A stretch of 63,370 nucleotides of DNA, the filler included, from Bipalium vagum (lineage: Eukaryota), in NCBI GenBank assembly GCA_037834085.1. It is 3 parts of 3 records of this genome, joined end to end, with 100 filler letters (N's around TTAATTAATTAA, not from the genome) between each part and the next. Parts side by side here need not be neighbours in the genome. Positions count along the whole stretch, not along the records: positions 41,401 to 63,370 come from JBBMKC010228423.1; 2 more parts are not named here. The stretch is one strand, 5' to 3'. The notes beneath the pieces are model-generated. The model was not told where the DNA came from. It saw only the letters and a program-made list of their open reading frames with translations, and did not search any database. Of the stretch, positions 48,101 to 60,689 are shown piece by piece. Numbering within the stretch: position 1 is the stretch's first letter; every line of letters starts with the position of its first letter. The position numbers were made by a program, and so were the translations under genes.

Positions 48101-49494
48101 TTTTCTTTAAATCCGAGAAAGAATTGATTATGTTCTTTTGATCTTATTTTTATTGCAAATGAATTCACAAATTCGATAACTTAAAAGTTGTTCTTATGAT
48201 CTCAGTTTCGTAGTTTTTTTCCTTTTATCGCTTCGGTTGAGTAAATTTAAGATAACTTCGTGAATTTCGATCTTATTTATGATGAACCAGATCTCTTATC
48301 TTTTTCTTCACTCTATCAATTAACCCTATACCAATATTGATTTGTAGAAATGAGATATGAGGTCCACAGAGTTTCTTGAAAAAAATATTCTTTGCAAAGA
48401 GAAAATATAATGAATCTTCATTACAGGATGGGATATCCCAACATTTAAATCAAATATTAAACCCGTGAGGTTTTCATACGGACATATCGTAACGATTATT
48501 TTTTATAAAAAAATTACTAAATATAAAATAATATTTTATACAATTTTAATTTTTTTATAATTAATATTTTAAAATTTAATAAATACGAATTCTTTAACTG
48601 AGAACAATTATTTGAGCATTATAAAATTTTCTAAATTTTCATAAAAAATTAAATAATATTAACCAATAATAAATTATGATTAAAATAAAACAAATTAATA
48701 CAATCATAAAAATCATTATTGATTTTAACGATAATTATTGATAAATCAATGCAATTATATTTATTATAATTCAATATTAATAATAATTTTAAAAAATATA
48801 AAATATGTAGAAATGGAGAAAAAGAACCAGATAAAAATAATATTAATTTCACAAATAAAATAAAATAAAATATAATAATATTATAAAAAATAGTTTCAAG
48901 AACAAAGGGAGTTAATAATTTGAAGACATTTAAAGTTATTTTCATATGATATATAAGATGTGGAGACCCGTTAGATATTTGATAACATTTACTATACTGT
49001 AATGTGAAAATATAAATAAAAAATGTATCGATATTTTATTGTTATTATAGTGTGAAAATAAAAATAGTGTGAAAACCGGTTGAAAATTGTATGAATTCAT
49101 AAAAAAGAATATATTTGGTGAAAAATAATAAAAGTGAAATAAAAAAAATAGCTTAAATTTTAAAAATGTGGGAGTAGACTGTGATTGATTAGGACCACCT
49201 CACAAGTCACGACTTACAGACAAATATCTTTACTTCGAATATGAATCGTACCTTCTTTTGCGGAATAGGGTAGATTAAGTCTGGCTTTAATAAATTAACC
49301 TTTAAACTGTTTTATAATGTCTACTAAATATAATGTAGCAACTAGCATGACTGGTAGGAGTATCATGTTTTTTCCTCCGATCAATTACACATTATCCCAG
49401 ACGCTATTCCACACCCTGCCCGTAATAATCATTAACTTTACCTAATTTGTTTCTTATTGAATTTATAAAGTTAAAATTAACAATATGTAAACAT

Positions 49495-50588
49495 ATGAGG
49501 GCGAATCAAAAACTTCCCAGAAAAATAATACAAATCAAAGCAAGACATAATAAAAAATATTTTTCGAAAATATTTTTTTTTTGAACCATTTAACTCAAAA
49601 CATTTTTCCATATCGTGTCATCAACGTTCTAAATCATTTCTAAAACAATTTTGAACCTTTGATTTGAACCATATCAAAAAAACTATTTTAAAAAATGACA
49701 TACAATATTGAATTTTGTCGTGTAATCAAATTCCACCAAACAAGTAGCCAAGACATTACTACTGTTTACAGGTGTTGGTATCTTTTGACGAAGTTGTTCT
49801 TGCATTTCGTCAATTTCGGAACAGTATTTATCCCTTGTTATTGTTTCACCACTTTCACAAGGAAGCTGTAGTAGATTACGCCCGTACAACACCACCAGAC
49901 TGTAAACAGTACCTTTTTTGAAAACAAATTTGGTTGGGCACTTGTTTCGCTAATTCATTTTTATTTAACCATTACGCACTTCTTTTACGGTTATCATATA
50001 ATATCCATTTTTCATCGCATGTAATGATCGTGATAAAAATGGTTCAAATTTATTTCTTAGAATTAATGAAAAGCAAGTTTGATATCTCTGAATTTTTTGA
50101 ATTTCATTAAGGTGATGAGGCGTTTTTCCATTTTTTAACTTTTTCAATTGCTTTCAGATTACGTGAAACAGTGGCTATGGATATATAACTCTTCTGCAGC
50201 CTCCCTAACTGTAATTTGAGTATGTGATTCAATCAACTGCTTCAATTGATCATTGGAAAATCTTTGGAACCAAAAACAAGTAGTGCGTTCCGAAACCGAA
50301 CCTTCTCCCCAAGCTTGGTTAATAATTCGCGTTTCTTCTGTTGCATTATGGCCACGTTTAAATTTGTAAAGCATAATTTCTTCGAAATACATGTCACGAT
50401 TACTTAATTTCACCTCCTGAGATTCAAAAATCTTAAAGTATTAATAGACAGTTATAATTATATGATAGAGAAATCTAAAATCTTCGATTTAATATATTAA
50501 ATTAGACAATTCAAACTATTTTTTAAATAAAAAAATGCATTAAAAAATAGTTGATAAAAAATCGGCAATTTCATATGTAAGAACCTAA
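49495..50588 (-). mobile_element. Composite mariner relic: cecropia-like 5' part joined to a differently ended 3' terminus
   Basis: 5' TIR TA-TTAGGTTCTTACATATGAAATTGCCGATT; IMLYKFKRGHNATEETRIINQAWGEG, GETITRDKYCSEIDEM. The left end has a TA-TGAGGGCGAATCAAAAACT terminus and EKCFELNG. Confidence 0.85.
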
Positions 50589-53520: not shown

Positions 53521-55219
53521 GAATTCCAATTTACCATTATGCAATAATAATTAAAAAAAAACAATTCTCGTGAATATAGAGATATTAATGAGAATATAAA
53601 ATACCCTTGAAGGTATTTTCATTATTAGTGTAGTGACAGAGGTTTTTACATTTCATAATATTTTCAAATTTGTGACTGTTTTATCCTTGATGTTTAATAT
53701 TAAATACATTATTTTTACTTGTATTTATTTATTATTTTTATGTTATATTATATAAATATTGATAAGTAATATATAATTATTTCCGTCTAACAGAAATACA
53801 CAATATTTCAAAATATTGCACTAGAATGAAGTAGATACAAAATTTTATATGATATCTTAAAACAAACTATAATAGTTTTAAATTATATTTGACTCAGAGA
53901 TAAGCAAAAGCATAGTTCCAATTTAAACAAAATGTTATCTTAGTCCTTCGACACAAATTCCATCTTTGACTTTCGCCAAAGATTTCCGAATTCACCGCAA
54001 AGTCCATCCGTGTAGGTCGAAATGTTAAGATAATTTCTAATGGGAAGCACTTAACTTTGCAACCTACAATATTTTTTTCAACCAGAATGTGATTGATATA
54101 AAATATTAAGATCTCCATCATAATTTTAATTAAATCATGTACTTTCAGTTCATATTCCAATCCTTTTATTTAGATAACCACTGATGAATATTATTTATTG
54201 AGGTAATAAATATGCCAATTGAAAAGACTATCAGCCTATTATGGAAATATTAAAAGGAATTGATTTTATAACGGCACCCCATGACCTGTTATAAAATCAT
54301 CATAAAAATATGTTCTAAATTTTTACTTGAAAATATTAAGTATATCAAATTGGAAAAATAATCCATACTTTTCCAATTCGTTCATTAAAAATAATAAAAT
54401 ATATAGATTTCAGATTCCAAATATCATTATTGATAAGTCGATTAATCAATTTAATAAAAGAAAATAATTGTCTTATTTTTAGTTTACGAAAGGAATTTCT
54501 AATTTTTTTTGAAGGCAGCAGTTTTGTTTGACAAAAGCAAAACATCAAACAAACAAATTGCAATCAATGCTTATTTGATATCTTAAAAGCCAGTATATAA
54601 CTGAGTCGACCCCCTTAATAACATCACTTAAGTCTTCTCAATCACACTATAGAATTTGTTCTATTTGAAACCATGTTGACATGTCAACATTTCAATTAGT
54701 ATGAAGAGAGTTTAGTCGCTAAAATGAGTATTATGTCGGAGAGATGGTGGTTGGAGAGCTACCAAAAGAAAGATGAAAATCCCATTCGACTCAAAGCGCT
54801 GTTTTATAAAAACTGAAAGTTCACTGCAAACTCCAATCAATTAGAATAAATGATAAAAATAATAATCACACGGTTTTACACAAGTGAAATTCAAATAGAT
54901 TCTATGTCAATATCCTCTTCAATGATAATGTTTTCTTTTCCATTAGGATCTGGAGAGTTCATAGTTCCTCTGTTCGATGTACAAAGACCAGGCCTGGTTT
55001 TCTTGATAGAGTGTTGTTTCTGGAAAACATTACACGTTATACTTTATATAAATAATGTAACAATTTAATTTATTATTATTATTAATAATAATATTATTAT
55101 TTTATTAAAAATATCGATTTAATTTATAGAAAAATATGATAAAACATTTAGGAAATTAGAAATTAACTTAACAAATTAAGTATTTCTTTGGAGTAAAATA
55201 AAAATATGAAAAATTCCAT

Positions 55220-56293
55220 TTACATTAATTCTCTTACTTTGTAAGTTTTCTCTGGATATAAAGATTTCTGTTGTTTGGTGGACACTTGTAAGTCTCTATG
55301 TAAAACAGTGCCCAAAACTAACGGATCAACGCCTTCGTGAGTCTTTTTATGCTTAGCTAAGTGATCACTTCTCATGAAACGTTTAAAGCACAATGGACAA
55401 ACAAAACGTTTTTCTCCCGTATGCGTTCTCATGTGTCTTTGAAGCTCATCAGATCTGGTGAAAGATTTGGAACATAAATGATAAGTACAGACAAATGGAC
55501 GGTCATTATTGTGCCATCTGATATGAGCTTTTAAATGACTAGTTTTCCCATAGGTTTTGTGACAAATGTAACATATGTGAACCTTTTTCGCTCCGTTAAG
55601 ATTGGATCGAGAATTTAGGCCTTGGTGACAATTTGGACATGTACACTTTTGACATTTTCGTTGGCCGATTTGTGGAATGTTTGTTCTGCTCGAAGAAATG
55701 GGTATTTTGTTTTGACTAGTTAATAAAGCAGATATGTTTGGTGGAGGACTGTTGTTTTTCATATTATCAATTGAAGAATAATCTAAGCTAAAATCTTTAC
55801 AGGCTAATAGATTCGGGAGTGTATATGGAGAAGGAAAGCAATTTACAGATCTGCGGAAAAAGTGATCAACACAATCTTCAACGTTTTGAGATGAGAGAGA
55901 ATTTAGTAATTGGATTTGATTTTTAGAGTCCATTGAGGTGAGCTCAATGCAAGGCTTTCTGGCTATAGGTCTGATCGGAGTATTCTGACAAGGATTGGAT
56001 ATTATTGAATTTACTGGAGCCGATTGTTGACTATTGGTGATCAGACTTTGATTGACGAAAAACTTTTCCGTTGTCCTTTGAAGTGCCGCCATTTCAGGAC
56101 TTTGCCAGAAATCGTTGGAATTGATGACAAATCTGTTGGAGCAATTTGTTTGAGACTGCAAATAGCTCATATCGATGGACGGAGGGATTGGACCTGGCAC
56201 AATATGAGATGATTTGTTGGGAAAGAATCCTTGGGAATTTGGCAATATTTGAAAAGCCGTTGGAATGTTAATGATAGCTGGTCCAGAATTCAT
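55220..56293 (-). CDS. Sp5: Sp5/buttonhead-like transcription factor (Btd box + three C2H2 fingers), about 357 aa, single coding exon
   Basis: Long ORF with Btd box [11 protein letters not shown] and fingers ..[14 protein letters not shown], ..[41 protein letters not shown] (LAKH and the R-rich Btd box favour Sp5). A strong acceptor ttttttgcag sits just before acaATG (56293), and a candidate donor GTAAGT at 56640 suggests a non-coding first exon. Confidence 0.9.
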
Positions 56294-56894
56294 TGTCTGC
56301 AAAAAACGAAACACGATTATTTTTTAATTATAAACTAAAGAAATGTTGAAATTCGTCTCAAACAGATTTATGGGTTTGGGCGCCAACTCTGAGATTCCTT
56401 ATTATGTTGAGTAGTTGGAATGTCAATTTCTTGACAATTTACACTTGTCATTTCCTGCTCTCGTCAATAATCGACTTGCAGTTTTTCTTCATACATATTG
56501 CCATTGTTGTTATGTGGAAATTATTTCATCAGAAACTGTGAACCGTTAAAACAAGAAAAGATTCACACATTTATTTTTCAATGAATTTTATTAAAGAAAA
56601 AAGTAAAAGTTTCCCACTTAAAAGAACAAAAAGGACTTACTTCAAAATGAAAAACGTTGATTTGATTGATTGACTAATTGATTAATGAACTGTTTGCTTG
56701 GATTGATATAATTGTTTCCGAACAAAATAAACAAAAACCCCGTTAAACTTTGTCGCTGTTTTAAAATAATATTAATAATAATAGGCCAAAAGACAAGATT
56801 TCAAAACAAGAACATGAAATCATAATACTAAACAAGCTATATATGGATCATTTATATATGGTCGCTGTTAATTTGAACGATTTTGTAAATTAAA

Positions 56895-56910
56895 ACGACC
56901 AATCACAGAG
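56895..56910. promoter_or_regulatory. CCAAT box (NF-Y type) in the putative Sp5 proximal promoter
   Basis: GACCAATCACAG with CCAAT at 56899-56903, about 260 nt beyond the candidate first-exon donor at 56640. Confidence 0.35.
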
Positions 56911-57297
56911 CAGCAAACGCAAGATGAGGCCTTATTATTATTCCAGCTGTGGAAAGTACAGCATGGCTAACAGGCATTTTATTGCTAATATAGACGAATA
57001 CATACGTCGTAAATATTCACACATACCTACACGAACCGACAAAAATGCACGCATGTATTCAAAACTACATGCACACATGTGAAAATATATTTCAACATAC
57101 AATCAAAATCATTGACACACACAGTCCAACAGACCCATCCAAAAATTTTCGTGTACGTGTGCATTTCTGTCAATGTCTACATGTATAACTGTGTGGTTTG
57201 AGTTGTTTCATGAATGTGTATATGTGTGTTCAATCGTGTATGTATGTGATAGAGATCATGCAAAACTATGAAATTTTCTAATCATAACTTTATCATT

Positions 57298-57490
57298 CAG
57301 ATCAAAGTAGGCGTACCGCTCCAGAGACATAAAAACCGGCTGCAGAGAGGCGGGACCGGCATCAAAGACCGATTGAGAGAGAGCGGGTTATTATTTGTAT
57401 GCCGGTATCTAGCTAACCAATTAAATCAGGTGGTTACGATGGCGGCGTCATCAAAGTGACTCTTTGATCTCTTGATATGCACCGCCGATC
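57298..57490. promoter_or_regulatory. Candidate Wnt-responsive element: 4 TCF/LEF HMG sites plus GC-rich Helper-like sites upstream of Sp5
   Basis: ATCAAAG at 57301, 57361 and 57450; CTTTGAT at 57462. TGGCGGC (=GCCGCCA) at 57440, ACCGCCG at 57481, and further RCCG/CGGY words at 57315, 57335, 57355, 57368, 57401 in an otherwise CpG-poor sequence. Confidence 0.7.
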
Positions 57491-58367: not shown

Positions 58368-58470
58368 ATGGGCGGTACACGCTTACAAAATAGCGGCCTC
58401 TTTGATCATACCGACACTTAGAAGAAGTACAAGAGAGGTAGAGCGATTTGGAGATAGAGAGCGGGATTAG
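58368..58470. promoter_or_regulatory. Second candidate TCF/Helper module
   Basis: GGGCGGT 58370, GCGGCC 58393 directly before CTTTGAT 58400, ACCG 58410, GAGAGCGGG about 58457 (same word as at about 57379). Confidence 0.5.
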
Positions 58471-60689
58471 AGGATTATTTGATTGTTGGTCTCATGTGCC
58501 GTGGAAGAGGTCTGATTTAATAATTGTGCTATTTTCTTCCTATCTCTATCTCGCTCTCTCATGTTAATTCTTTTGTGCTTCTTGTTCTAGTTTTTTTTCA
58601 TGCCATCTGGGTTCCACGCTTTCATTTTTGTTTGTTTTTCTATTATTTTGTCAATTGCTTGAAATGGTTTCTCGGAATTGTTTTGGAATCCCGATTTCAA
58701 CCAAATCCCTTCACAATCTGTTCCTCCACGTGGCACACAATTGAAATAAAATTATTTTTAAAAAAATACAATATATAAATAATAGTAAAAAATAATCATT
58801 CCATTTAAGAATGTGTGTACTTAAGTTTGTGTGTGTGTGCCCTTTGGGTGGGGTGAATTTACAGAAGAGATCTCAACAATTCTAGTTGACCTCTTTATTG
58901 GAGCCGTCTTGAATTTAACTAAAATTCAAGATCAATATTAGTAAATATGGACATTCAAATAATTGCTTATGTCTATAAATTTAAAGATTTCCATTTGGAA
59001 TGAAATTATTCTCTAAAAAATCATTGAACAATGGAAAAAATTTCAGATCAAAGTCATCATAAAGATTGGTGATGATTAATTTTTCTCGTTTACTAAAATA
59101 AAATTTGAACTGGAGATCCTAATGGATAGTGGGAATACTCTAAAAATAGTTTCATATTAATAATGCAAAAGAAAATCAAACCGATTTTACATATGGAATT
59201 GAATTATTTAAAAAAATGATCACCGTGTACAGTTTGGATTTTGATGAAGACTTTGATTTTATCAATTTCATAAAATATTAAGCTCAAAATTCAAAAGCTG
59301 ATGTTAAGGTTTCGCAGTGATCGAACAAATATGAATATTATCATGGTAATTGTTGGCTTATAGGGATCATCTAGTAGATGAACCATGAAAAATGAGAACA
59401 TTCATTTCTGAATCTTGGATATAAAATGCAAAATATTGAAAAATAATATAAATAAATGATAATTATTTTTTTAATATTTGTTTTATTTTGTTTTAATTTG
59501 GAAATTTACTGTCCAATCGGATTTGTTATTTTTAATTTTTAAAAATTATAATATTTATGTTTTTTATAATATTTATATTATATTTTAATATTTAATAGTT
59601 AAAATTAAAAAATAATTATTTAATTAATTAAAAAAAATAATTAAAATTTTATAAACTGTTGGAAAAGGAGTATAATGGAAATATTTACACATGGAAAGTA
59701 ATTAACACATTTTAATTCATACACAGTAAAATACACATATAATTATTGTAAATAAAAATATTCATTAATGTTTAAACAAAAAATATTTCCATAAATGCAC
59801 AGTTTTTTTAGCTTGACATTTTTAAATTTTAGACAAGTTTTGAATAAAAAAGTAATGCATTTTTTTTGTTTTTAAAATAAATTTGAAATTAAAATAGTAA
59901 AGTTGTTACAGTTGTGATAAGCGATAAGGAGAAACAAAGCACAAAAAATAACAGGAAAAATTATATATATAATGTTTATAAAAAAAATATATAATATTTT
60001 AGGCATTACTAAGCAGACAACTTTCAGGGAAAGGAAAATTGAGGGACAAATATCAAAATTTAACTGCTGAGTAAATAATAGCAAGGAAAGTGGATTAATG
60101 GCAAACATGGGATTTAGATAATTAACTAAACAGTAAGTTTGTTCTTAATTATCAGAGATTTTCTTTTAAGATACTTTGATTTCCTTTTAATTTTAATAGG
60201 AGACTTCGATTTTTTAATTTCTTTTTTCGTACTTCTCGCTTATATCACCTCATCAATTTTAAATAAGTTCGCCGAATTATATTTTTCAGAATTGTAAAAA
60301 TTGTAAATTATTTGCATTATTTTTCGTCTTAGATTTGTCTTAGAATAAATTTCTTCCAACGCAAATATGTTATTTAACCATAAATCATCAAATCTTTCCT
60401 TTTCGTTTTTGATAATATTTCCTTATGATCTAAAAATTATTGAAGGTACCGTAATTTATCTCATTTCCACTTTTATTTATTTATTCCTCTCTGTAACGTG
60501 CTTATAATTTCTTCTTCCAGCACAGTTTTGTTGAATTTCAACAAATTTTCTTTGAAATATTTTTTTTCAAAAAAACGTCACAATGTTCCCAACAACCTAA
60601 TATTTCTGATATTTTTAGGTTTCAAAATCACCAATCATTCTCACTTTGGATAAGTACCTTACATAATTTTCAGTATTATTATTCGAATA

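What the first reader, a model, noticed from the sequence alone, without database searches (positions are those of the whole stretch)
57298..57490. Dense TCF HMG + C-clamp Helper site cluster upstream of Sp5: candidate Wnt-response enhancer
Seen: four exact ATCAAAG/CTTTGAT sites within 168 bp (57301, 57361, 57450, 57462). The last two form an inverted pair with a 5-nt spacer, flanked by a perfect GCCGCCA (57440, minus) and ACCGCCG (57481), with several further RCCG words. This sits about 0.7 kb beyond the candidate first exon, in a CpG-poor genome where this 7-mer should occur roughly once per few kb (rough estimate assuming about 25% GC). Established: CTTTGAT is the TCF/LEF HMG site, GCCGCCR/RCCG is the Helper site read by the C-clamp of invertebrate TCFs, and Sp5 is a conserved Wnt/beta-catenin target in vertebrates, Hydra and planarians. 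Inference: this is the cis-element wiring the Wnt-Sp5 axial circuit in this animal, with its bipartite grammar readable from raw DNA.
Basis: partly seen in the sequence, partly recalled or inferred. Interest (0 to 1): 0.75.

Follow-up and report, generated by a model that had tools for sequence, protein, structure and literature searches.

The report
TCF site cluster upstream of planarian sp5
Four binding sites for the Wnt-pathway factor TCF, two of them next to GC-rich 'Helper' motifs, sit about half a kilobase upstream of a flatworm sp5 gene and are probably the switch by which Wnt signalling turns this tail gene on, an expected arrangement that has not been tested here.

Summary
Four exact CTTTGAT sites lie at 57301, 57361, 57450 and 57462. 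A perfect GCCGCCA lies at 57440 on the minus strand and ACCGCCG at 57481.

The cluster is far denser than chance: 0 of 3000 order-3 and 2 of 3000 order-5 Markov simulations of the 22-kb piece reach four sites in 168 bp. It is also the most GC- and CpG-dense 200 bp of the piece.

The gene below it is a planarian sp5 orthologue, about 80% identical to Dugesia japonica Sp5. A related planarian's mRNA places a non-coding first exon at about 56828-56641, behind a TATA and a CCAAT box. The cluster therefore lies about 470-660 bp upstream of the inferred start.

Most likely it is a promoter-proximal Wnt/beta-catenin/TCF response element. One HMG-Helper pair has the 'FF0' arrangement that is optimal in Drosophila.

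The genome is GC-poor but not CpG-poor. Wnt control of planarian sp5, and a TCF motif in its regulatory element, are already published. This scan had already noted the same architecture on another piece of this genome (s1-734033).

Verdict: a new member of a known kind, of moderate interest.

The parts
57301..57307 (-). HMG/TCF site A. CTTTGATC; 11-mer ACTTTGATCTG. A degenerate reverse Helper-like word (ACCGCT on the + strand, 57315-57320) lies 6 bp upstream of the 11-mer, which is the AK6 geometry.
   Evidence: geometry read using the definitions in PMC4154663
57361..57367 (-). HMG/TCF site B. CTTTGATG; 11-mer TCTTTGATGCC. It is followed after 3 bp by CCCGCC.
57347..57356 (+). GC box GAGGCGGGAC. 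It matches 9 of 10 positions of the Sp1-type consensus, which is recalled and not taken from a call. It is a candidate Sp5 autoregulatory site or a degenerate Helper for site B.
   Evidence: CCGCC on the minus strand at 57349-57353; Sp5 binding to its own promoter in Hydra: PMC6338789
57450..57456 (-). HMG/TCF site C. CTTTGATG; 11-mer ACTTTGATGAC (57457-57447).
57440..57446 (-). Perfect Helper site GCCGCCA. It directly abuts the 11-mer of site C on its 3' side in the same orientation, which is an FF0 pair.
   Evidence: 1 of only 2 GCCGCCR in the piece; geometry; FF0 definition
57462..57468 (+). HMG/TCF site D. CTTTGATC; 11-mer TCTTTGATCTC (57461-57471). It is inverted relative to site C with a 5-nt spacer.
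   Evidence: inverted repeats I3, I7
57481..57487 (+). Helper-like ACCGCCG. It fits RCCGCCR but not GCCGCCR. It lies 9 bp 3' of the 11-mer of site D in the same orientation, which is an FF9 pair.
   Evidence: RCCGCCR consensus from PMC4267635
57314..57368 (.). Three copies of a 14-nt direct repeat (ACCGGCTGCAGAGA type) spaced 21 and 20 bp apart. The third copy contains site B.
   Evidence: family D1 (71-100% identity to the reference copy)
56899..56903 (+). CCAAT box, about 71-75 bp upstream of the inferred transcription start.
   Evidence: read; position relative to the start is inferred
56851..56858 (-). TATA box TATATAAA. It begins 30 bp upstream of the base that aligns with the 5' end of the related transcript L001.
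56641..56828 (-). Inferred non-coding exon 1 (5' UTR) of sp5. It ends at a GTAAGT donor; the intron 56640-56297 ends in AG.
   Evidence: The 5' UTR of L001 (an sp5 mRNA of a related planarian) has its best match in the whole piece at 56800-56672 on the minus strand, E 3.8e-6; alignment A2; splice signals read. No RNA of this species was seen.
55238..56296 (-). sp5 exon 2. ATG at 56293-56291. It encodes the N-terminal region, the Btd box (CxCPxC) and three C2H2 fingers, and ends at a GTAAGAG donor.
54891..55019 (-). sp5 exon 3, the C-terminal tail up to the TGA stop.
   Evidence: tblastn of P0001, P0002 and P0004; the L001 3' UTR matches 54883-54820, E 3e-10
58371..58407. Possible second, distal module about 1.55 kb upstream of the inferred start: CTTTGATC (58400-58407, + strand), with CCGCC on the minus strand at 58371-58375 (CCGCCC read) 24 bp away.

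Best explanation
The 190-bp GC-rich island at 57298-57490 is a promoter-proximal Wnt-response element of a planarian sp5 gene.

Proposed mechanism:
- TCF/LEF proteins bind the four CTTTGATS sites through their HMG box.
- When Wnt signalling is high, as in the posterior of the animal, beta-catenin-1 joins them and activates the TATA/CCAAT promoter about 0.5-0.65 kb downstream. Without beta-catenin the same sites may hold the gene off.
- If a planarian TCF carries a C-clamp, it would also read GCCGCCA (FF0 pair with site C) and ACCGCCG (FF9 pair with site D). That would raise affinity and give a symmetric Helper-HMG-HMG-Helper module for two TCF molecules.
- The GC box beside site B may let Sp5 feed back on its own gene.

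Shown here: the motifs, their geometry, their statistical rarity, the identity of the gene and the approximate gene model. Inferred: TCF occupancy, Wnt responsiveness, use of the Helper motifs, autoregulation and the exact transcription start. I give the Helper/C-clamp sub-claim alone about 0.4.
For: Motifs and places.

Rarity: 0 of 3000 order-3 and 2 of 3000 order-5 simulations give at least 4 sites in 168 bp, and 0 of 3000 in either give at least 4 CTTTGATS. Only 2 of about 1296 two-GC 7-mers cluster this way in the piece.

The island is the top 200-bp window of the piece for CpG (13) and for GC (48%, against 28% for the piece). A GC-richer background makes this A/T-rich 7-mer less likely, not more.

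Helper-type words co-locate with HMG sites: CCGCC for 3 of 7 copies within 15 bp (P 0.0014), RCCGCC for 2 of 6 (P 0.018), GCSGS for 7 of 17 (P 1e-6).

The FF0 geometry with a perfect GCCGCCR is one of the two arrangements bound best by Drosophila TCF (PMC4154663). Human TCF1E tolerates FF0-11, and the human SP5 promoter is C-clamp- and Helper-dependent (PMC4154663, PMC4267635).

Gene identity: about 80% identity to D. japonica Sp5, and the N-terminus is shared by four planarian orthologues.

Position: upstream of a TATA/CCAAT promoter whose first exon is supported by a related species' mRNA.

The cluster is not a local repeat, tRNA or Rfam RNA, and the one ORF scanned there, the longest, has no Pfam hit.

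Biology from papers: planarian sp5 falls after beta-catenin-1 or wnt1 RNAi, and its regulatory element in S. mediterranea holds a TCF motif (PMC6821139; PMC9849279). The Hydra Sp5 promoter has five putative TCF sites and responds to Wnt/beta-catenin (PMC6338789).
Against: - No experimental or comparative evidence for this sequence was obtained: no reads, no accessibility data and no orthologous upstream DNA.
- CTTTGAT is over-represented throughout the piece. There are 15 sites outside the cluster, against about 5-7 expected from low-order models and 12.6 from an order-5 model. Single sites therefore mean little here.
- The co-location of GC words with HMG sites is not independent of the island being GC-rich.
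- No site has the 5' S of the fly 11-mer. Only one Helper is a perfect GCCGCCR, and the words beside sites A and B are degenerate.
- ATCAAAG also fits the general Sox consensus WWCAAWG, which is recalled and not from a call.
- In S. mediterranea the illustrated putative sp5 enhancer lies about 3 kb upstream, not 0.5 kb (PMC11410931). I could not tell where the published TCF motif sits because Supplementary Data 4 of PMC9849279 is closed.
- The paper on the three planarian TCFs describes HMG, beta-catenin and Groucho regions but mentions no C-clamp (PMC5643146, passages).
- The only orthologous 5' sequence seen (L001) has a CCTTTGATC in its 5' UTR at a place where this window has none, so positions of sites are not obviously conserved.
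Confidence: 0.62

Rival explanations
1. The TCF sites are real Wnt-response sites, but the GC-rich words are not C-clamp Helper sites. They would be Sp/KLF-type GC boxes (Sp5 autoregulation or a general Sp factor) or simply the GC-rich context of a regulatory island. This overlaps with the best explanation and competes only with its Helper sub-claim.
For: GAGGCGGGAC at 57347-57356 and CCGCCC near 58371-58375 read as GC boxes. Hydra and mouse Sp5 bind their own promoters (PMC6338789). No paper found links a C-clamp or Helper sites with planarians, and the planarian TCF paper names no C-clamp.
Against: The best Helper is a perfect 7-mer GCCGCCA, 1 of only 2 in 22 kb against 0.12 expected. It sits at zero spacing in the FF orientation, the geometry preferred by fly TCF. 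Its mirror partner fits RCCGCCR. Neither of these two words is a canonical GGGCGG box.
Confidence: 0.3
2. It is a functional regulatory element that is not a beta-catenin-activated one. The ATCAAAG words would be read by another HMG-box protein (a Sox factor, possibly as a dimer on the inverted pair), or by a TCF paralogue that acts only as a repressor.
For: ATCAAAG fits the broad HMG consensus WWCAAWG (recalled). The inverted pair with a 5-nt spacer resembles dimer sites. Planarians have three TCFs, one lacking the beta-catenin-binding domain (PMC5643146).
Against: All four sites carry the TCF-preferred T before CAAAG and the S after GAT, that is CTTTGATS. A canonical Helper abuts one of them. 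sp5 is a documented beta-catenin-dependent gene in planarians.
Confidence: 0.12
3. It is a chance cluster or neutral sequence with no regulatory role.
For: The 7-mer is common in this piece, 19 copies. A genome of this kind contains tens of thousands of 22-kb stretches, so a few such clusters are expected somewhere. No functional data exist.
Against: Per-piece probability is at most about 7e-4. The cluster lies in the pre-specified place, within 0.7 kb upstream of a known Wnt target. It coincides with the most GC/CpG-dense 200 bp of the piece and carries Helper motifs in a preferred geometry.
Confidence: 0.12
4. It is a fragment of a transposable element or other dispersed repeat that happens to carry these words, for example a small inverted-repeat element.
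For: The Helper-HMG-HMG-Helper stretch is an imperfect palindrome, and there is an internal 14-nt triplication. Mariner remnants lie in the same piece. This scan noted the same architecture on another piece of the genome (s1-734033), which could be a second copy.
Against: No other copy was found in the 18.1 kb examined. The other note also places its copy upstream of an sp5 gene, which suggests an allelic or duplicated locus rather than a dispersed family. Genome-wide copy number could not be tested.
Confidence: 0.06

Closest known systems
Human SP5 promoter Wnt-response element (dependent on the C-clamp of TCF1E)
   Same: It sits upstream of the orthologous gene and has multiple HMG sites with nearby Helper motifs. 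Three functional HMG-Helper pairs (AK7, RW1, FF1) are reported for it, and SP5 is a C-clamp-preferred target (PMC4154663; PMC4267635). Here there is an FF0 pair, an FF9 pair and degenerate AK6/FF3 pairs.
   Different: There is no sequence homology, only shared grammar. The human element is experimentally validated and this one is not. It is not known whether the planarian TCFs have a C-clamp.
TCF motif in the sp5 regulatory element of Schmidtea mediterranea, and the annotated sp5 promoter and enhancer there
   Same: Same gene family in a related planarian. sp5 falls after wnt1 RNAi and was listed among genes with a TCF site in an ATAC/ChIPmentation-defined element (PMC9849279). The sp5 locus is illustrated with a promoter at the start site and a putative enhancer about 3 kb upstream (PMC11410931).
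   Different: The species is probably different. No identical protein is in the database, and only one run holds the DNA. The published coordinates are in closed supplements, so I cannot say whether the published motif corresponds to this cluster. Neither paper's passages mention Helper sites or a four-site cluster.
Hydra Sp5 promoter
   Same: It is a 2,992-bp upstream region with five putative TCF sites. It is activated by Wnt3, LRP6 or stabilised beta-catenin in reporter assays, and Sp5 binds its own promoter (PMC6338789). Here there are four TCF sites plus a GC box.
   Different: The Hydra sites are spread over about 3 kb and are conserved among Hydra species. Here four sites are packed into 168 bp and conservation is untested.
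Drosophila bipartite HMG-Helper Wnt modules (for example nkd-IntE)
   Same: They share HMG sites paired with GCCGCCR within a few bp, with AK6 and FF0 as the optimal arrangements (PMC4154663). Site C with GCCGCCA is an exact FF0.
   Different: The fly HMG consensus begins with S, whereas the four sites here begin with A or T. The back-to-back inverted arrangement of two FF pairs was not described in the passages I read.

Membership tests
Sp5 orthologue (Sp/KLF family, Sp5/Btd group) | Btd box (CxCPxC) followed by three C2H2 zinc fingers | tested here: met
   CTCPNC followed by three fingers. Pfam zf-C2H2 E 3e-13. This region is invariant across five planarian sequences.
Sp5 orthologue (Sp/KLF family, Sp5/Btd group) | Closest named relatives are Sp5 proteins | tested here: met
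   The best named hit is D. japonica Sp5 (E 1.6e-187; about 77-80% identity depending on the call: 10, 12, 54). Vertebrate Sp5/Sp5a and Hofstenia sp5 dominate the finger-region hits, although one Macrostomum hit is named Sp9. No tree was built.
Sp5 orthologue (Sp/KLF family, Sp5/Btd group) | N-terminal Sp box | tested here: not met
   No SPLALLA-type motif (recalled consensus) is seen in exon 2 or in the four planarian orthologues, which all start [11 protein letters not shown] or [11 protein letters not shown]. This appears to be a lineage feature rather than evidence against orthology.
TCF/LEF Wnt-response element | Multiple consensus HMG sites (CTTTGWWS) clustered near a Wnt target gene | tested here: met
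   4 of 4 sites match CTTTGWWS within 168 bp. They are 4 of the 13 such 8-mers in the piece.
TCF/LEF Wnt-response element | Occupancy by TCF/beta-catenin and transcriptional response to Wnt | not testable with these tools
   No ChIP, ATAC or RNA data for this species were reachable.
TCF/LEF Wnt-response element | Conservation of the sites in related species | not tested
Only an mRNA of a relative (L001) was obtained, and it does not reach the upstream region.
Bipartite HMG-Helper element read by a C-clamp TCF | Helper motif GCCGCCR (or RCCGCC) within about 0-11 bp of an HMG site | tested here: met
   GCCGCCA at spacing 0 (FF0) from site C. ACCGCCG at spacing 9 (FF9) from site D. Sites A and B have only degenerate words.
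Bipartite HMG-Helper element read by a C-clamp TCF | The organism's TCF carries a C-clamp domain | not testable with these tools
   No TCF gene lies in this piece, and no tool gave me a planarian TCF sequence. The passages of PMC5643146 name no C-clamp. Literature searches found nothing on flatworm C-clamps.
Bipartite HMG-Helper element read by a C-clamp TCF | Helper mutations reduce TCF binding or activation | not testable with these tools
   This requires an experiment.

The most novel reading that the evidence does not exclude
The bipartite HMG + Helper code, and its use at the Sp5 promoter in particular, is an ancient bilaterian feature retained in flatworms. A planarian C-clamp TCF would read a symmetric Helper-HMG-5 bp-HMG-Helper module, with two TCFs back to back and each in the optimal or permitted FF geometry. 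[quoted passage not shown] The palindromic double-FF module would be a compact, high-affinity Wnt switch design not described in the fly or human passages I read.
Probability: 0.25. Interest if true: 0.6.

Novelty: new member of a known kind. Interest (0 to 1): 0.42.

Why it matters
Sp5 is one of the few Wnt targets shared across animals, and it helps set the head-tail axis in planarians. A compact, sequence-defined candidate response element gives a concrete 190-bp fragment to test in reporters, gel shifts and footprinting. It also offers a way to ask whether flatworm TCFs use the Helper/C-clamp mode of DNA recognition, on which I found nothing in print. The general conclusion, that planarian sp5 is a direct TCF target, is already proposed in the literature. 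The gain is therefore in resolution and grammar, not a new principle.

Tried and rejected
Leads that went nowhere or were rejected:
- Cross-species conservation. A metagenome scan with the N-terminal part of exon 2 gave one locus, L001. It is an mRNA, useful for the gene model but not for the upstream region.
- Local repeat or TE origin. No repeat family overlaps the cluster in 18.1 kb, and no tandem array covers it.
- RNA gene or coding exon. There were no Rfam hits at gathering score and no tRNA. The only ORF there that I scanned, the longest at 63 aa, has no Pfam hit.
- A coding first exon with an Sp box. Three-frame translation upstream of exon 2 shows none, and the orthologues start at the exon-2 ATG.
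- CDX/CAG-site grammar (PMC8421206). A TTTATG word and CTGCAG/CAGAGA words occur between sites A and B, but no position matrix was available to me and I make no claim.
- Organism identity. Five planarian Sp5 proteins are 76-83% identical to each other in a star-like pattern. No name was obtained for the unnamed ones, so the species is left open.
- Spliced model. Only exon 2 was used for searches, and exon 3 was located by tblastn.
- Supplements were not opened because they were announced as closed. Supplementary Data 4 of PMC9849279 may hold the coordinates of the published sp5 element and its TCF motif.
Full report
**Observation.** The finding's piece (41401-63370) is 28.0% GC with CpG observed/expected 0.89. 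CTTTGAT or its complement occurs at 57301(-), 57361(-), 57450(-) and 57462(+), exactly as stated. The last two sites are inverted with the 5-nt spacer TGACT. GCCGCCA lies on the minus strand at 57440-57446 and is one of only two GCCGCCR in the piece, against 0.12 expected from shuffles. ACCGCCG lies at 57481-57487. All four sites extend to CTTTGATS, 4 of the 7 such 8-mers in the piece. They also fit the vertebrate consensus CTTTGWWS, 4 of 13 such sites in the piece. Against the 11-bp fly consensus they match 8-9 of 11 positions, and none has the 5' S (my reading).

**Is it more than chance?** Composition predicts 5.2 copies of the 7-mer in the piece and dinucleotide shuffles predict 6.85. The observed number is 19, in the top 0.23% of 7-mers with two G/C.
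- Part of that excess reflects a general abundance of TTTGA/TTTGAT words: an order-5 expectation is 12.6. Isolated sites carry little weight here.
- The cluster is different. Randomly placing 5 or 19 sites gives at least 4 in 168 bp with probability 1e-5 or 0.0064.
- Markov-simulated pieces give it in 0 of 3000 runs (order 3) and 2 of 3000 runs (order 5). Four CTTTGATS together occur in 0 of 3000 runs in both.
- As a look-elsewhere control, only 30 of 5516 canonical 7-mers reach four copies in 168 bp. Of these, 27 are pure A/T and only two have two G/C, this motif and GTGAAAA.
- The island is also the most CpG-dense (13) and GC-rich (48%) 200-bp window of the piece.
- Helper-type words lie within 15 bp of a CTTTGAT more often than their numbers predict: CCGCC 3 of 7 (P 0.0014), RCCGCC 2 of 6 (P 0.018), GCSGS 7 of 17 (P 1e-6), RCCG 9 of 66 (P 5e-4). 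This last test is not independent of the island being GC-rich.

**The gene.**
- The 364-codon minus-strand ORF at 55220-56314 carries a Btd box and three C2H2 fingers.
- Its best relatives are four planarian proteins at about 74-81% identity. One of them is named Sp5 of Dugesia japonica. Vertebrate Sp5/Sp5a and acoel sp5 follow over the finger region.
- All four planarian orthologues begin at the internal [11 protein letters not shown] or [11 protein letters not shown], so the start codon is at 56293-56291, three bases after a tttttgcag acceptor.
- The ORF reads through a GTAAGAG donor after ...KTYK. The C-terminal exon is at 55019-54891.

**The first exon and promoter.**
- A metagenome scan with the N-terminal part of exon 2 returned one locus, L001, a 1,422-nt spliced sp5 mRNA of a related planarian.
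- Its 187-nt 5' UTR has its best match in the whole piece at 56800-56672 on the minus strand (E 3.8e-6; the next hits are A/T-rich low-complexity matches, the best at E 2e-4).
- Its 3' UTR matches 54883-54820, just past the stop (E 3e-10).
- In the global alignment, the first base of L001 falls on 56828. That is 30 bp downstream of the start of a TATATAAA box (56858-56851) and about 71-75 bp downstream of a CCAAT box (56899-56903). The homologous stretch ends at a GTAAGT donor at 56640.
- I therefore infer a non-coding exon 1 at about 56828-56641. No RNA of this species was available, so the transcription start is inferred and not shown.
- On this model the four sites lie at about -473 to -640 and the outer Helper at about -659.

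**Grammar.** I used the definitions in Archbold et al. 2014 (PMC4154663; passages read). They define an 11-bp HMG site and a 7-bp Helper GCCGCCR. FF means a Helper downstream in the same orientation, and AK means a reversed Helper upstream. AK6 and FF0 are bound best and are the most active.
- Site C with GCCGCCA is an exact FF0 pair.
- Site D with ACCGCCG is FF9. That word fits the RCCGCCR form of Hoverter et al. 2014 (PMC4267635) and lies within the FF0-11 range reported for human TCF1E.
- Site B is followed after 3 bp by CCCGCC. On the other strand this reads GAGGCGGGAC, a near-consensus Sp-type GC box (consensus recalled).
- Site A has only a degenerate reversed word (ACCGCT) at AK6.
- Sites C and D with their Helpers form an imperfect palindrome: Helper-HMG-5 bp-HMG-Helper.
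- Between sites A and B, a 14-nt unit recurs three times with 21- and 20-bp spacing, the last copy containing site B. I have no explanation for this beyond a possible local duplication.

**What it is not.** No repeat family overlaps it in 18.1 kb and no tandem array covers it. There is no Rfam family at gathering score and no tRNA. The longest ORF across it (63 aa), the only one scanned, has no Pfam hit. Whether copies exist elsewhere in the genome could not be tested.

**Literature.**
- In Schmidtea mediterranea, sp5 is a posterior, beta-catenin-dependent gene (PMC6821139; passages). That paper's passages mention no binding-site analysis.
- Pascual-Carreras et al. 2023 (PMC9849279; passages) found sp5 down-regulated after wnt1 RNAi. 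They list it among genes with a TCF binding site in an ATAC/ChIPmentation-defined putative enhancer and conclude it is a direct target.
- Ivankovic et al. 2024 (PMC11410931; passages) illustrate the S. mediterranea sp5 locus with a promoter at the start site and a putative enhancer about 3 kb upstream.
- The Hydra Sp5 promoter (2,992 bp, five putative TCF sites) responds to Wnt/beta-catenin and is bound by Sp5 itself (PMC6338789; passages).
- The human SP5 promoter is a C-clamp- and Helper-dependent TCF1E target with AK7, RW1 and FF1 pairs.
- Searches for 'C-clamp' with 'planarian' or 'flatworm', and for 'Helper site' with 'planarian', returned 4, 2 and 2 papers. In the one I opened (PMC9133022) 'planarian' occurs only in the reference list. 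The others I judged from titles and abstracts only, and none is about flatworm TCFs.
- The paper describing three planarian TCFs names HMG, beta-catenin-binding and Groucho-binding regions but no C-clamp (PMC5643146; passages).

**Which species?** No identical protein is in the 5.8-billion-protein collection. Only one run (2024) holds the DNA at 0.99 of sampled words. Runs of three other coded organisms hold 0.05-0.20, and no holder is on record as RNA. This argues against the heavily sequenced S. mediterranea, but it does not name the species. The five planarian Sp5 sequences are mutually 76-83% identical.

**Earlier notes of this scan.**
- Note s1-734033 describes the same arrangement on another piece of this genome: four TCF sites, two with Helper motifs, a near-symmetric Helper-HMG-HMG-Helper module, 0.5-0.7 kb upstream of a planarian sp5. 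It is an unchecked AI note. It agrees with what I found independently on this piece, and it means the scan has found this before. Whether it is an allelic copy, a duplicate locus or the same DNA in another tile I cannot tell.
- Note s1-747372 records a TCF/LEF locus elsewhere in the genome. I did not see it.

**Verdict.** The most likely reading (0.62) is a promoter-proximal TCF/beta-catenin response element of sp5. The Helper/C-clamp part is plausible (about 0.4) but rests on geometry alone. The main rivals are:
- the GC words are Sp-type boxes rather than Helpers;
- another HMG-box factor, or a repressor-only TCF, reads the sites;
- the cluster is due to chance;
- the cluster derives from a repeat.

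A Wnt-to-sp5 link, and a TCF motif in the planarian sp5 element, are already in print. This is therefore a new member of a known kind. Its added value is a base-resolution, testable module and the first hint I could find of Helper-type grammar in a flatworm.

Noticed in passing
window 41401-63370 (whole piece): CTTTGAT is over-represented across the whole sp5 locus, not only in the cluster. There are 15 sites outside the cluster, against about 5-7 expected from composition or shuffles (12.6 from an order-5 model). Eight of the 19 sites lie in the 3 kb upstream of the inferred sp5 start.
   Followed up: partly
window 58371-58407: A further CTTTGATC has CCGCC on the minus strand (CCGCCC read from the sequence) 24 bp away, about 1.55 kb upstream of the inferred start. 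Two more CTTTGAT sites lie at 59047 and 59251. Together they may form a distal module, comparable to the roughly 3-kb upstream enhancer drawn for S. mediterranea sp5.
   Followed up: no
window 57314-57368: A 14-nt unit (ACCGGCTGCAGAGA type) occurs three times with 21- and 20-bp spacing, about two helical turns. The last copy contains TCF site B. In gene sense the other two copies look like degenerate HMG+GCCGG units.
   Followed up: no
L001 18-26: The related planarian's sp5 mRNA carries a perfect CCTTTGATC about 18 nt from its 5' end. The aligned place in this window has no such site.
   Followed up: partly
window 49683-50413 (minus strand): A degraded mariner/Mos1-type transposase lies downstream of sp5, with HTH_48 at E 5e-15 and a partial DDE domain at E 6e-4.
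   Followed up: partly
window 49004-49118: GTGAAAA occurs four times on the + strand within 115 bp. It is the only other two-GC 7-mer in the piece that clusters like the TCF motif.
   Followed up: no
window 56046-56091 (inside sp5 exon 2, + strand): A CTTTGAT and the piece's only other GCCGCCA lie 32 bp apart, antisense within conserved coding sequence (the ...[20 protein letters not shown] region). This is probably a coding coincidence.
   Followed up: no
window 41401-41461: A perfect 22-nt tandem repeat (2.8 copies) lies at the very edge of the piece.
   Followed up: no
window 57000-57290: A CA/TG-rich low-complexity stretch (acacata/tgtgtat type) lies between the inferred promoter and the TCF cluster.
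   Followed up: no
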